This document shows, one piece after another, positions 34,206 through 36,801 of a DNA stretch of 64,000 bases. Within the stretch, counting starts at the first letter, position 1, and each line of letters starts with the position of its first letter. The notes beneath the pieces were generated by a model. That model was not told the origin of the DNA and ran no database searches. It was given only the letters and a program-made list of their open reading frames with translations. The stretch comes from Dimorphilus gyrociliatus (Eukaryota; Animalia; Annelida): contig CAJFCJ010000013.1 of NCBI GenBank assembly GCA_904063045.1, forward strand, positions 1,222,156 to 1,286,155. The letters run 5' to 3'. The position numbers and the translations under genes were made by a program.

Positions 34206-36801
34206 CTAGCCATTTAATACAGTATTTGGCAGACTCTGATCGTCAGAGCAATATGCGTCTGCTGATTCTATGGAAAAAAAAAGCAGAATTAGTGATAGGG
34301 AAAAAATAGCCAATTAAAAAGCATTGTTCTTAATGAATCATTGTACTTACCTTTGACGGCTTTTTTCTGGGCCATTTTATCTGGAATTATATACATAGCA
34401 TTAGCCAGGAAAAATCCTCCGCCGAGTACACAAATGAAGCAGTTGATATATAGAGAATATTGAAGAGATTTATATTGTTTGTAATTATGAGAATAACTTG
34501 CTAAAATGCTTCCAATACTTCCCGCCACCTGAAAAAGATAAAGAGTTGATAAATAATTTTTATTAGTAAACTACGCTTATATTAGGCTACCTGTCCTATA
34601 AGAAAGGGGCTTCCGGCATCTCCGAAAGCGTGAGACATAAGAATTTGACCGGCTTCGGCTATTGATCTTCGATTAGGCACAACAACGTACAGGAGAATAT
34701 CTGCAACAATTGGCCAATTCATGCAGAGTAGTGTTTCACCGATAAATATAAATATCCAGGTTGCGACTAAGCATTTCTTTGATAGATAAAGAGCTAGAAA
34801 GAGGAAAGGCGAACATGATAACATGCCAAAAGCGCAAATCAAAGGATCGGCTTTTTCCGTATACTTTCTTAAAAATTTAGCAGTGTGCCAGCCAATAGCC
34901 ACTCCTGTTATCCCCGCAACGCAGGTGATTGACCCAAAAACCATGCTAACAGTTTCCCTACTCATCTTTGGACTTCCACCTGTTACTTCAGTTTGAGCAA
35001 GTATGGAATGATTCAAGTAATATGGGGCCCAAAAGGCAAGAGCGCCCGTAACAAATGCGACGCATGTAAAGCCCAGAGAGGATAACATAAAACTACGATT
35101 CTTGCCGAGATAAACAACATCCGACTTAAGCGAACTACTTTGCAGATGAGATCCTCCTTCGCTAGCTCCTCTAGAAGGCTCTTTCACCAGCCAAATAATA
35201 AGTAATACACAAACAATACCAAAGACAGGCGTAATCCTTAGCGACCACCGCCAATCGCCTGTAGCTTTTTCAACCCCCGATGCTATAATATAGCCAAGAC
35301 CAGACCCAACTGGAATAGCGAAATAGAATAAAGATAACATATTTGTTCTCATTGTTCCGACAAATAAATCAGCTATAATCGTTGGAGCAATAGTCGAATA
35401 ACTTGCTTCACCAACACCTACAAGAGAACGCATCAATAAGAAGCTCCAGTAGGTTTTCGTTGTAAATGAACTGCCAAGTGTTATTCCTGACCAGAATAAT
35501 ATTCCAACCGACATAAGTACTTTCCTATTGTACCGGTCGCCAAGGTAACCAAATACCGGTGAGAAAATCATATACGAGAGTATAAAAGACGTTTGGATTA
35601 GACCAAGTTCGTTTAGGTGATCGTCATCGCTTGTCGAATTTCCGCTTGTACCATTACCAAAGAGAGTTGAATTCATAGGAGTATTATCATTTTTAAAGAA
35701 GTTGTCTTTAATCGATTGTAAAACCCCTGTTTAAAATGAGCATAAATCTTTATTATTATTGCATTATCGATCATTAAATTTATATATATATATATATTAA
35801 CATTTATAATCATAAAAAAAAGAACATACCAGCACAAATGCACCTATCTATATAATTCAGTAAATTAGCTAATATTAATATAAACATAATAATTATAGCG
35901 TTCTTTGGATTTCCCGAAGATTCTCTTTCGACTTCGTCTCCGTTGTCTAACTCAAACTTATCCTCTAAAGGATGCTTTTCCTCGTACATAGTACATTTTT
36001 CTTTGTAATTTGAGGATGTCATATTTTTAAATATTCTATTTTATCTAAATAGAATCAATCAGCTTCTCTTTATTCTATTGCGAAAAAAACGACAATATTC
36101 TTCTTGGAGCGATTGCTCTATTCCTCTTTCTTTTTTTTGTACTTTTCTTCTTATTCTTTATTCTTTTATAAGACAGCAGGTTCAATCACGCTCGTTACGT
36201 GTCGCAAGCTTCGTTTAAAATATTGTATTATAATAATCAATAGGTATATGGATAATGTTCAATAGACATAGGTGGACATTATACTGTTTACGTAACCAAT
36301 TCTTGTATGATAAGGGTACTACTTGTGATTTGGTAAATAATTTTAAGAAAGAAAAACAATAATAACTATGATCATTTGTGCTATTTTATGGTCTTTATCA
36401 AGATAGATTATTAATTTATATTATCTGGACCAAAATTGGGTCCGTTGCTTGTTTTTAATGTTAATTGTTTATGTTCTAAACTGACAATTTGTGCAGAGAA
36501 ATGTATAAGTTTTATCTTTTCGGAATAATCTGAAATAGTAACCTCCAACTTACGTAATATCTAATCATTTGATAATATCTGATAAATAACAGTGTTTACC
36601 TGCAACAGTAAAACGATCCATGTAGTTTAAAAGATTCGTCCATGTTAGAATTGCAACAGTTATATAACCAAGACGATTACTTCCCGTTTCATGCATATGA
36701 GAGTTTGTTTCATCTTCCAAGGTCCGAGTTTCTTCTATTTCTGTTGCGCGATCTTCGTTTACTAGGAGAGGAGCATCATCGGTATTTCTTTTTCGGTCCA
36801 T
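34206..36801 (-). CDS. SPNS1: Spinster-family MFS transporter with two alternative first coding exons (36801-36600 or 36022-35830) joined to a common body starting at 35726
   Basis: NLLNY(M/I)DR TM1, FGYLGDRYNRK, RSLVGVGEASYSTIAPTIIADLF, FYFAIPVGSGLGYI, and SHAFGDAGSPFLIG. Stop at 34206. Confidence 0.93.

What the first reader, a model, noticed from the sequence alone, without database searches (positions are those of the whole stretch)
35830..36801. Spinster has duplicated, mutually exclusive first exons: two N-tail + TM1 modules, only one with a dileucine lysosomal signal
Seen: exon 1A (36801-36600, MDRKRNTDDAPLLVNED...WTNLLNYMDRFTVA-G) and exon 1B (36022-35830, MTSSNYKEK...LANLLNYIDRCICA-G) each begin with ATG and each encode the conserved spinster TM1 motif NLLNYxDR. 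Both end in a phase-1 GT donor that splices in frame to one shared exon at 35726 (GVLQSIKD). No second gene body lies between them, and they cannot both be in one ORF. Established: [DE]xxxL[LI] is an AP-adaptor lysosomal sorting signal. DDAPLL in 1A fits it, and 1B has no such motif. The residues after DR also differ (FTVAG vs CICAG). Inference: alternative promoters switch one transporter between a lysosomal form (SPNS1-like lysolipid exporter) and a differently localised, possibly plasma-membrane form (SPNS2-like S1P exporter). This would achieve by exon duplication what vertebrates did by gene duplication.
Basis: partly seen in the sequence, partly recalled or inferred. Interest (0 to 1): 0.8.

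Follow-up and report, generated by a model that had tools for sequence, protein, structure and literature searches.

The report
Two alternative first exons in spinster
A lysosomal lipid-transporter gene (spinster/SPNS1 type) in the tiny annelid Dimorphilus gyrociliatus has two interchangeable first coding exons, both seen spliced in RNA; the public gene model wrongly strings them together, and it is untested whether the minor form goes to a different membrane.

Summary
Observation confirmed. On the minus strand, exon 1A (36801-36600) and exon 1B (36022-35830) each start with ATG, encode a tail plus TM1 with NLLNYxDR, and end in a phase-1 GT donor that fits the acceptor at 35726. A TM1 profile scores 1A at E 2e-15, 1B at 3.5e-8 and nothing else in the window.

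Contigs of one RNA run of the same organism carry both junctions: 1A-exon 2 at depth 318, 1B-exon 2 at depth 38. No 1A-1B junction was seen.

The genome is Dimorphilus gyrociliatus (GCA_904063045.1). Its single 582-aa model matches 1A plus part of 1B in tandem, which these contigs do not support.

1A is the ancestral exon. Its DDAPLL is the local form of a D-x-x-P-hydrophobic-hydrophobic tail motif found across animal SPNS1. 1B is minor and has no detectable orthologue. It departs at four positions that barely vary in 114 homologues.

Its transcript has a leader of at least 510 nt. That leader ends in a conserved block that looks like a core promoter, but also like a 3' splice site 70 nt after the 1A donor. 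A non-productive cassette reading therefore remains open.

The lysosome-versus-plasma-membrane switch is plausible but untested. The SPNS2 analogy is weak, because a second spinster gene exists.

The parts
36600..36801 (-). Exon 1A: the ancestral first coding exon (tail + TM1), with a phase-1 GT donor at 36599-36598
   Evidence: Translation. 73% identical to the N-terminus of the relative's transcript-derived protein P0001. Junction 36599->35725 seen in runs X3 (depth 318) and X2.
36763..36780 (-). Codons for D8-D-A-P-L-L13, the acidic dileucine-type motif of 1A
   Evidence: Identical in two related lineages (P0001, P0121). Aligns with DTAPIV / DTAPIL / DSAPFF of other animal SPNS1.
36613..36636 (-). 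NLLNYMDR, the TM1 signature of 1A
   Evidence: Followed by the canonical FTVAG.
36512..36571 (-). Conserved intronic block 1 (about 91% identical to the relative). It contains GATATTA about 30 nt upstream of TCAGATT (Inr-like), a consensus GTAAGT at 36553-36548, and ttactatttcag, a 3' splice-site-like AG at 36531-36530
   Evidence: Alignment A2 and identity profile. The 1B-bearing contig of X3 ends at 36532.
36023..36532 (-). Leader of the 1B transcript (at least 510 nt, transcribed continuously with 1B)
   Evidence: X3 contig 7 is continuous over 35829-36532. It has 3 uATGs against about 8.6 expected (P about 0.02).
36173..36275 (-). Conserved intronic block 2 (85-100% identical to the relative over about 100 nt); function unknown. 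In D. gyrociliatus it is followed by TATAAAAG, about 140 nt upstream of the 1B ATG
   Evidence: No Rfam family matches.
35830..36022 (-). Exon 1B: a diverged duplicate first coding exon (different tail + TM1), with a phase-1 GT donor at 35829-35828
   Evidence: Translation. TM1 profile E 3.5e-8. Junction 35829->35725 in X3 contig 7, depth 38. Coding-like codon score.
35843..35866 (-). NLLNYIDR of 1B, followed by CICAG instead of [FY][TS][IV][AS]G
35830..36000 (-). 171-nt internal-exon version of 1B (acceptor AG at 36002-36001, weak pyrimidine tract), apparently used by the public 582-aa model
   Evidence: The annotated gene spans 36801-34206 with a 582-aa product. 1A + this piece + exons 2-4 gives exactly 582 aa. 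No such junction appears in the X3 contigs.
35727..35829 (-). 103-nt intron between 1B and exon 2; it is also the 3' end of the 873-nt intron 36599-35727
   Evidence: Joints 'skips 103' and 'skips 873', both with GT..AG ends on the minus strand.
34591..35726 (-). Shared exon 2 (378 codons, most of the MFS body)
   Evidence: Pfam MFS_1 at E 2.4e-32. About 60% identical to animal SPNS1 and 89-91% identical to the two Logan relatives.
34351..34528 (-). Shared exon 3
   Evidence: The exon 2-3 junction is in an X1 contig. tblastn of P0001 matches here.
34206..34267 (-). Shared exon 4 with the stop codon
   Evidence: The end matches the end of the annotated gene.

Best explanation
This is the SPNS1-type spinster gene of Dimorphilus gyrociliatus.

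Exon 1A is the ancestral first coding exon. It encodes a cytosolic tail with the conserved acidic D-x-x-P-hydrophobic-hydrophobic motif (here DDAPLL) and a canonical TM1.

Exon 1B is an old or fast-diverged duplicate of that exon. It sits inside the unusually long 873-nt first intron. Each exon is spliced, without the other, to exon 2.

Shown:
- both junctions exist in RNA;
- the 1A form dominates, about 8 to 1 by contig depth in one run;
- the 1B RNA carries at least 510 nt of its own upstream sequence and no 1A sequence in the assembled contig.

Inferred:
- the 1B RNA starts at an internal promoter in conserved block 1 (a TATA-like box 30 nt upstream of an Inr-like TCAGATT at 36533-36527);
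- it is translated from the 1B ATG into a 522-aa transporter;
- that transporter keeps the essential TM1 Asp-Arg pair but has a different tail without the sorting-type motif and an altered TM1 end (DRCICAG);
- it may therefore differ in trafficking, in transport properties, or in both.

The public 582-aa model, which puts both TM1 modules in tandem, is most likely an annotation error.
For: - Sequence anatomy.
- RNA joints with GT..AG ends in X3 (1A-exon 2 at depth 318, 1B-exon 2 at depth 38), and 1A-exon 2 again in X2. Contig 6 is unbroken across the 1A donor, and contig 7 is unbroken across 36001.
- 1A-type transcript in a relative (P0001/L005).
- TM1 profile E-values.
- The residues of NLLNY-DR are kept although 5 of their 7 codons differ, three of them by two bases. 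This points to selection on the peptide after duplication.
- The ORF of 64 codons is open in 32% GC DNA. My estimate of the chance probability, from base composition, is about 0.006.
- The codon score is coding-like in frame only.
- The leader is depleted of uATGs, with 3 against 8.6 expected.
- Block 1 is conserved at about 91%, against 30-65% in the flanking intron.
- In D. gyrociliatus, introns that are much larger than usual tend to hold open-chromatin regulatory regions. The median intron is 66 bp and UTRs are long (PMC7854359).
- The TM1 Arg (R76 in human SPNS1) is needed for transport (PMC10115416). Mapping it to the DR motif is my inference.
Against: - The 1B junction rests on one contig of one run from one study, and contigs show neither the true 5' end nor the strand.
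- Contig 7 ends exactly where a graph branch would lie if 1A were spliced to the AG at 36531-36530. That would be a 70-nt intron, typical for this genome. Such an RNA would stop after 106 codons.
- No orthologue of 1B was found among short ORFs or among 1.84 billion representatives.
- The nearest relative has no 1B in the 300 nt upstream of exon 2, and none in the roughly 265 nt after conserved block 2.
- The relative's transcript contig runs unbroken through the 1A-exon 2 junction.
- 1B departs at four positions that vary little or not at all in 114 homologues.
- There is no evidence for the protein.
Confidence: 0.55

Rival explanations
1. Non-productive variant or relic. The 1B-bearing RNA starts at the 1A promoter. 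The long first intron is then removed as two short introns (70 nt and 103 nt), leaving a 700-nt cassette (36529-35830). The reading frame from the 1A ATG stops after 106 codons. 1B would then be a decaying duplicate, or part of a regulatory 'poison' exon, and no isoform B protein would be made.
For: - ttactatttcag|A lies 70 nt after the 1A donor, close to the 66-bp median intron (PMC7854359).
- Contig 7 ends at 36532, which is the first base shared by the genomic context and the 1A-spliced context (CAG).
- The site is conserved in the relative.
- 1B is minor.
- 1B has no orthologue.
- 1B breaks four conserved TM1 positions.
- The predicted product is a truncated ORF.
Against: - Contig 6 runs unbroken across the 1A donor, and contig 7 carries no 1A letters, whereas at the exon-2 end both contigs carry 28 shared letters.
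- The 1B ORF, its ATG, its phase-matched donor and its NLLNY-DR residues are intact despite saturated synonymous change.
- uATGs are depleted in the leader.
Confidence: 0.3
2. Two promoters switch one transporter between a lysosomal SPNS1-like lysolipid exporter (1A, with the dileucine) and a plasma-membrane SPNS2-like S1P exporter (1B). This would replace by exon duplication what vertebrates achieved by gene duplication.
For: - Alternative 5' exons are real in RNA.
- The motif is present only in 1A, and its position is conserved across SPNS1.
- N-terminal dileucine motifs direct other lysosomal MFS transporters. Sialin LL mutants go to the plasma membrane (PMC11116495). The same is reported for CLN7 (Steenhuis 2010, as cited in PMC5627054).
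- SPNS1 can transport at the cell surface when it is present there (PMC9546575, PMC10115416).
Against: - No localisation or transport data exist.
- No paper on an SPNS1 sorting motif was found.
- The strict motif is present in only 5 of 106 homologues.
- The shared 11 TMs are SPNS1-like, and SPNS1 did not transport S1P (PMC9546575).
- The genome has a second spinster gene.
- 1B appears restricted to this lineage and is minor.
Confidence: 0.15
3. The public model is right: 1A and most of 1B are joined in one mRNA (acceptor at 36002-36001), giving a 582-aa protein with two TM1 modules in tandem.
For: The annotated gene span and the 582-aa length fit exactly, and the piece is in frame.
Against: - There is no 36599->36001 junction, and contig 7 runs unbroken through 36001.
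- The acceptor has a poor pyrimidine tract.
- An extra TM would invert the topology of the remaining 11 helices of an MFS fold. This is my inference from the 12-TM MFS architecture.
- The relative's transcript-derived protein has 525 aa and no insert.
Confidence: 0.03

Closest known systems
Vertebrate SPNS1 (SLC63A1), the lysosomal proton-coupled LPC/LPE exporter
   Same: - About 60% identity over exon 2 and an MFS_1 fold.
- TM1 NLLNYMDRFTVAG is identical in 1A.
- The GEASY acidic residue of TM4 is present.
- The tail motif lies at the same place (DTAPIL in reptiles, DSAPFF in fishes, DDAPLL here).
   Different: A second, mutually exclusive first exon with a divergent tail and TM1. None is annotated among the 120 best homologues, all of which have a canonical TM1.
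Variable-first-exon genes (UGT1A, clustered protocadherins; from general knowledge)
   Same: Homologous alternative first coding exons are each joined to common downstream exons, and one is used per mRNA.
   Different: There are only two exons, the variable part is one tail plus one transmembrane helix of a transporter, and separate promoters are not shown.
N-terminal (and C-terminal) isoforms of mollusc 'protein spinster homolog 1-like' in NCBI annotation (for example Mizuhopecten P0056 and P0057)
   Same: Alternative 5' coding exons change the cytosolic tail right at the sorting-type motif (SD|TAPIV versus TN|TAPIV).
   Different: In molluscs the switch point lies upstream of TM1, so TM1 is shared. 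Here the tail and TM1 are one exon, and the whole module is duplicated.
N-terminal dileucine sorting of the lysosomal MFS transporters sialin and CLN7
   Same: An acidic dileucine in the N-terminal cytosolic tail, as in DDAPLL of 1A. Its removal sends sialin to the plasma membrane (PMC11116495). The CLN7 case is cited in PMC5627054.
   Different: For spinster/SPNS1 no such experiment was found. Here the motif is removed by exon choice, not by mutation.
Drosophila spinster/benchwarmer alternative splicing
   Same: [quoted passage not shown]
   Different: The paper I could read does not describe duplicated TM1 first exons. I could not open the original description.

Membership tests
Spinster / SPNS (SLC63) MFS transporters | MFS fold with 12 TMs | tested here: met
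   Pfam MFS_1 at E 2.4e-32 on exon 2 alone. With one first exon the protein has 522-525 aa, like its homologues.
Spinster / SPNS (SLC63) MFS transporters | TM1 signature NLLNYxDR with the transport-essential Arg | tested here: met
   Present in both 1A (NLLNYMDR) and 1B (NLLNYIDR). R76A abolishes transport in human SPNS1 (PMC10115416); equating R76 with this Arg is my inference.
Spinster / SPNS (SLC63) MFS transporters | Canonical residues after DR ([FY][TS][IV][AS]G) | tested here: met
   Met for 1A (FTVAG). Not met for 1B (CICAG), whereas 114 of 114 homologues have F/Y at +1, T/S at +2 and V/I at +3.
Spinster / SPNS (SLC63) MFS transporters | Closest relatives are SPNS1 orthologues | tested here: met
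   The named top hits are 'protein spinster homolog 1' of spiralians and vertebrates at 57-63% identity.
Alternative (variable) first-exon gene | Each first exon is spliced to the same second exon | tested here: met
   Joints 36599->35725 and 35829->35725 in RNA contigs.
Alternative (variable) first-exon gene | Mutual exclusion | tested here: inconclusive
   No contig joins 1A to 1B, and contigs 6 and 7 are unbroken at the relevant sites. However, contigs drop rare forms, and a 1A-36529 junction cannot be excluded.
Alternative (variable) first-exon gene | A separate promoter for each first exon | tested here: inconclusive
   The 1B contig ends at 36532 in a conserved TATA/Inr-like block, which is also a 3' splice-site-like sequence. 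Contigs cannot show transcript starts.
Acidic dileucine [DE]xxxL[LI] adaptor-binding signal | Consensus sequence in a cytosolic tail | tested here: met
   D8-D-A-P-L-L13 lies in the N-terminal tail of 1A, 43 residues before TM1. It is absent from 1B, where EEKHPLE and DKFELD each lack the second hydrophobic residue.
Acidic dileucine [DE]xxxL[LI] adaptor-binding signal | Conservation in orthologues | tested here: inconclusive
   Identical in two close lineages. The strict form occurs in 5 of 106 homologues, and the relaxed forms ([DE]..P followed by two hydrophobic residues, or [DE]xxx[LIM][LIVM]) in 84 of 106.
Acidic dileucine [DE]xxxL[LI] adaptor-binding signal | Binds AP complexes and directs lysosomal delivery | not testable with these tools
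   This needs localisation or binding experiments. No SPNS1 study was found.
SPNS2-type plasma-membrane S1P exporter | Orthology to SPNS2, or S1P transport at the plasma membrane | not tested
   The 120 best hits are SPNS1-type. No SPNS2 sequence was compared directly. Transport and localisation are not testable here.

The most novel reading that the evidence does not exclude
D. gyrociliatus drives a duplicated 'tail + TM1' exon from an internal promoter. This makes a second spinster transporter that escapes adaptor-dependent lysosomal sorting and works at another membrane, possibly with altered substrate handling because TM1 lines the cavity. As a corollary, the D-x-x-P-hydrophobic-hydrophobic tail motif conserved from spiralians to vertebrates would be the so far undescribed lysosomal sorting signal of SPNS1. 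Spiralian SPNS1 genes would then repeatedly toggle this signal through alternative terminal exons.
Probability: 0.2. Interest if true: 0.65.

Novelty: new variant of a known kind. Interest (0 to 1): 0.42.

Why it matters
SPNS1 is the lysosomal exporter of lysophospholipids, and its loss causes lysosomal storage disease. I found no paper on how it is sorted to lysosomes. A natural isoform pair that differs only in the cytosolic tail and TM1 offers a ready-made experiment on two questions: which tail residues send spinster proteins to lysosomes, and how far TM1 can vary. The conserved D-x-x-P-phi-phi motif seen here gives a concrete candidate signal to mutate in human SPNS1. There is also a practical result: the public D. 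gyrociliatus model for this gene (582 aa with two TM1 modules) looks wrong and should be split into two isoforms of 525 and 522 aa.

Tried and rejected
1. Short-ORF homologue search with the 1B ORF found no candidate. An exhaustive phmmer search of the 64-aa exon against 1.84 billion representatives gave no hit at E <= 0.001. Full-length B-type isoforms would be hidden inside A-type clusters, so this excludes only separately called 1B ORFs.

2. The relative's genome is incomplete here. Contigs L006-L009 (1A plus about 700 nt downstream) and L001-L004 (starting 300 nt upstream of exon 2) do not overlap. Whether 1B is present in the unassembled TA-rich gap is unresolved.

3. A JGI metagenome scan with exon 2 returned only distant MFS genes at 26-34% identity.

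4. An exact look-up of the window's exon-2 ORF for other strains found nothing on record.

5. No Rfam family matches the first intron.

6. The inverted-repeat search gave only AT-rich, weak pairs. I rejected a docking/selector RNA structure as unsupported.

7. I considered spliced-leader trans-splicing as the reason for the contig end at an acceptor-like site. I rejected it because the genome paper reports no spliced leaders or operons (PMC7854359).

8. I considered a recent tandem repeat as the reason for the near-equal contig lengths (731 and 732). I rejected it because the two segments share no word of 12 or more bases.

9. The paralogue DgyrCDS933 has a single TM1 exon, so the duplication is specific to this gene.

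10. No paper was found on SPNS1 sorting motifs or on spinster alternative first exons. The original Drosophila isoform paper is not held.

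Full report
**What is in the sequence**

On the minus strand the window holds one spinster-type MFS gene.
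- Exon 1A (36801-36600) starts with ATG. It encodes 67 residues ending ...NLLNYMDRFTVA, and ends with one extra G before GTAAAC.
- Exon 1B (36022-35830) starts with ATG. It encodes 64 residues ending ...NLLNYIDRCICA, and ends with one extra G before GTATGT.
- The acceptor AG at 35728-35727 opens exon 2 at 35726. Either donor completes a Gly codon, followed by VLQSIKD.
- Exon 2 runs to 34591 (378 codons). Exon 3 is 34528-34351, and exon 4 is 34267-34206 with the stop codon.
- The two products have 525 aa (A) and 522 aa (B).
- Exon 2 alone hits Pfam MFS_1 at E 2.4e-32.
- No other spinster-like exon lies in the 64 kb.

**Is it more than chance?**

I built a 29-position profile of TM1 from 89 distinct homologue segments, leaving out the closest relatives. 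I searched it against every stop-free segment of the window in six frames.
- 1A scores 53.1 bits (E 1.8e-15) and 1B scores 29.8 bits (E 3.5e-8). The next-best segment scores 6.7 bits.
- The 64-codon frame of 1B is open in 32% GC DNA. From base composition I estimate the chance of that at about 0.006.
- Its codon-usage score is coding-like in its own frame only (+1, against -35 and -50 in the other frames). Only 1.5% of non-coding windows reach that score.
- NLLNY-DR is shared, yet 5 of its 7 codons differ, three of them by two bases. The peptide has therefore been kept while silent sites were overwritten.

**Organism and public annotation**

The neighbouring single-exon MFSD5 gene is an exact match to a protein of assembly GCA_904063045.1, contig CAJFCJ010000013.1. 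The named Dimorphilus gyrociliatus protein DgyrCDS933 lies in the same assembly.

The public annotation has one gene spanning exactly 36801-34206, with a 582-aa product. Exon 1A, plus a 171-nt internal version of 1B (36000-35830, weak acceptor), plus exons 2-4 gives exactly 582 aa. I infer that the public model puts both TM1 modules in tandem. I could not confirm this by an exact look-up, because that would have meant typing the sequence.

**RNA evidence**

I had one read-laying run, on 2,901 letters. All three runs are stored as contigs.
- Run X3 is the same organism (no mismatches) and is cDNA, since it holds spliced forms. It has two relevant contigs.
  - One, at depth 318, joins 36599 to 35725 (873 nt skipped, GT..AG) and runs on beyond 37000.
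  - The other, at depth 38, joins 35829 to 35725 (103 nt skipped, GT..AG). It is continuous from 35829 to 36532.
- Run X2 also has the 1A-exon 2 junction.
- Run X1 has the exon 2-3 junction.
- No contig joins 1A to 1B. The 1A contig is not broken at the 1A donor, and the 1B contig is not broken at 36001.

1A is supported in two studies plus a relative's transcript. 1B is supported in one study. Contig depth is a rough measure; the ratio is about 8 to 1.

**Which exon is ancestral?**

Two close lineages in Logan data are 89-91% identical in exon 2. They have a 1A-type N-terminus with TDDAPLL[VI]NEDR unchanged (P0001 from a 1,842-nt transcript contig, and P0121 from genomic contigs).

Across the 106 best homologues whose TM1 could be located:
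- the strict [DE]xxxL[LI] motif occurs in the tail of only 5;
- 84 match a relaxed acidic di-hydrophobic pattern ([DE]..P followed by two hydrophobic residues, or [DE]xxx[LIM][LIVM]) somewhere in the tail. A clearly homologous D-x-x-P-hydrophobic-hydrophobic motif (DTAPIV in molluscs, DTAPIL in reptiles, DSAPFF or DSAPFL in fishes) recurs at a similar place in most of them.

DDAPLL is thus the local form of an old, conserved tail motif.

All 114 homologues with a TM1 motif have M or V inside NYxDR, followed by [FY][TS][IV][AS]G. 1A is canonical. 1B has I and then CICAG, so it departs at four such positions.

The stretch EEKHPLED in the 1B tail may be a worn copy of DDAPLLVNED that has lost the second leucine. 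This is a weak resemblance and my reading only.

**Is 1B conserved?**

I found no evidence that it is.
- The short-ORF search found nothing.
- The exhaustive search of 1.84 billion representatives found nothing.
- In the nearest relative, the 300 nt upstream of exon 2 contain no 1B, whereas in D. gyrociliatus it lies 104-296 nt upstream.
- The roughly 265 nt that follow conserved block 2 in the relative are non-coding and TA-rich.
- An unassembled gap remains between these contigs, so absence is likely but not proven.
- The relative's transcript contig passes through the 1A-exon 2 junction without a break. In X3 the graph breaks there.
- The paralogue DgyrCDS933 has one TM1 exon.

**Where does the 1B RNA start?**

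This is the main open point. The first intron (873 nt) is far above the 66-bp median. In this genome, unusually long introns tend to hold regulatory open chromatin, and UTRs are long (PMC7854359).

Two blocks of the intron are about 90% or more identical to the relative, while the rest is 30-65% identical: 36571-36512 and about 36275-36173.

The 1B contig ends at 36532, inside block 1. Block 1 can be read in two ways.
- As a core promoter: GATATTA lies 30 nt upstream of TCAGATT, which fits the Inr consensus.
- As a 3' splice site: ttactatttcag lies 70 nt after the 1A donor.

If 1A were spliced there, the contig would end at exactly this base, because CAG is shared with the end of 1A. The RNA would then stop after 106 codons.

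Points against the splice-site reading:
- the 1A contig is unbroken at its donor;
- the 1B contig has no 1A letters;
- the leader has 3 uATGs where 8.6 are expected (P about 0.02).

Spliced-leader trans-splicing is excluded by the genome paper. I cannot settle this question with contigs.

**Function**

In human SPNS1, R76 pairs with E164, and R76A abolishes transport (PMC10115416). I infer that this arginine is the Arg of the NLLNYxDR motif. Both exons keep it, so isoform B could still be an active transporter.

N-terminal dileucine motifs direct other lysosomal MFS transporters. Sialin without its LL goes to the plasma membrane (PMC11116495), and the same is reported for CLN7 (cited in PMC5627054). 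SPNS1 transports LPC at the cell surface when it is there, and it does not transport S1P (PMC9546575).

An isoform without the motif could therefore work at another membrane. I found no study of SPNS1 sorting, and nothing here tests localisation. The SPNS2 analogy has no support: the shared body is SPNS1-like, and the animal has a second spinster gene.

**Verdict**

The reading of mutually exclusive first exons is supported by RNA. Separate promoters and a functional isoform B are likely but not shown (confidence 0.55). A non-productive cassette or a relic exon is the main rival (0.3). The localisation switch is a reasonable and testable hypothesis, with about 0.15-0.2 for the full model.

This is a new variant of a known kind of gene layout. 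Earlier notes of this scan list several alternative first-exon genes in the same genome. Here the layout is applied to a transporter's sorting tail plus its first helix.

Noticed in passing
window 34206-36801 (minus strand): The public D. gyrociliatus annotation has a single 582-aa model for this gene. The length fits 1A + 36000-35830 + exons 2-4, which gives two TM1 modules in tandem. The RNA contigs do not support that junction.
   Followed up: partly
window 36512-36571 and 36173-36275: Two intronic blocks are about 90% or more identical to a relative whose other intron sequence is only 30-65% identical. Block 1 also holds a perfect GTAAGT (36553-36548) 46 nt after the weaker 1A donor. Block 2 contains GACACGTAACGAGCGTGATTGAACCTGCTGT. 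No Rfam family matches either block.
   Followed up: partly
proteins P0003-P0120 (homologues of exon 2): Animal SPNS1 tails share a D-x-x-P-hydrophobic-hydrophobic motif (DTAPIV, DTAPIL, DSAPFF). Many spiralian tails also share PPFDDTVQL. I found no paper describing either as a sorting signal.
   Followed up: partly
P0056 vs P0057 (Mizuhopecten); P0051, P0063, P0070 (other scallops): NCBI isoforms of bivalve SPNS1 differ just upstream of TAPIV (SD|TAPIV versus TN|TAPIV). They also have alternative C-termini, one of which carries DDPIIL. Terminal exons that add or remove sorting-type motifs may be common in spiralian SPNS1 genes.
   Followed up: partly
L001-L004, bases 1-110: Four contigs from four runs of the relative all start within one base of each other, 300 nt upstream of exon 2. 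They start in sequence with TTAGG-like repeats (GGTTAGG, GGGGTTAGGATTAGGG). This is probably the edge of a repeat or an insertion in the first intron.
   Followed up: no
window 35841-35853 and 36262-36274: A 13-nt stretch in conserved block 2 is complementary (11 of 13) to the 3' end of exon 1B, just upstream of its donor. In AT-rich DNA this may be chance.
   Followed up: no
window 36802 to about 40050: About 3.2 kb upstream of 1A carries no annotated gene. The 1A contig of run X3 continues for 301 letters beyond 37000, so the 1A leader may be about 500 nt long (with 9 uATGs) or may include an upstream exon.
   Followed up: no
window 34657-35392: A coral metatranscriptome (X1) holds a slightly different strain. 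It has 7 differences in about 800 nt of exon 2: 4 synonymous and 3 conservative (C>Y, V>I, S>T).
   Followed up: yes
window 36568-36801 vs P0122, P0123: The phase-1 intron right after ...FT[VI]AG is at the same place in gastropod genomic ORFs (Littorina, Pomacea), so this exon boundary is old.
   Followed up: partly
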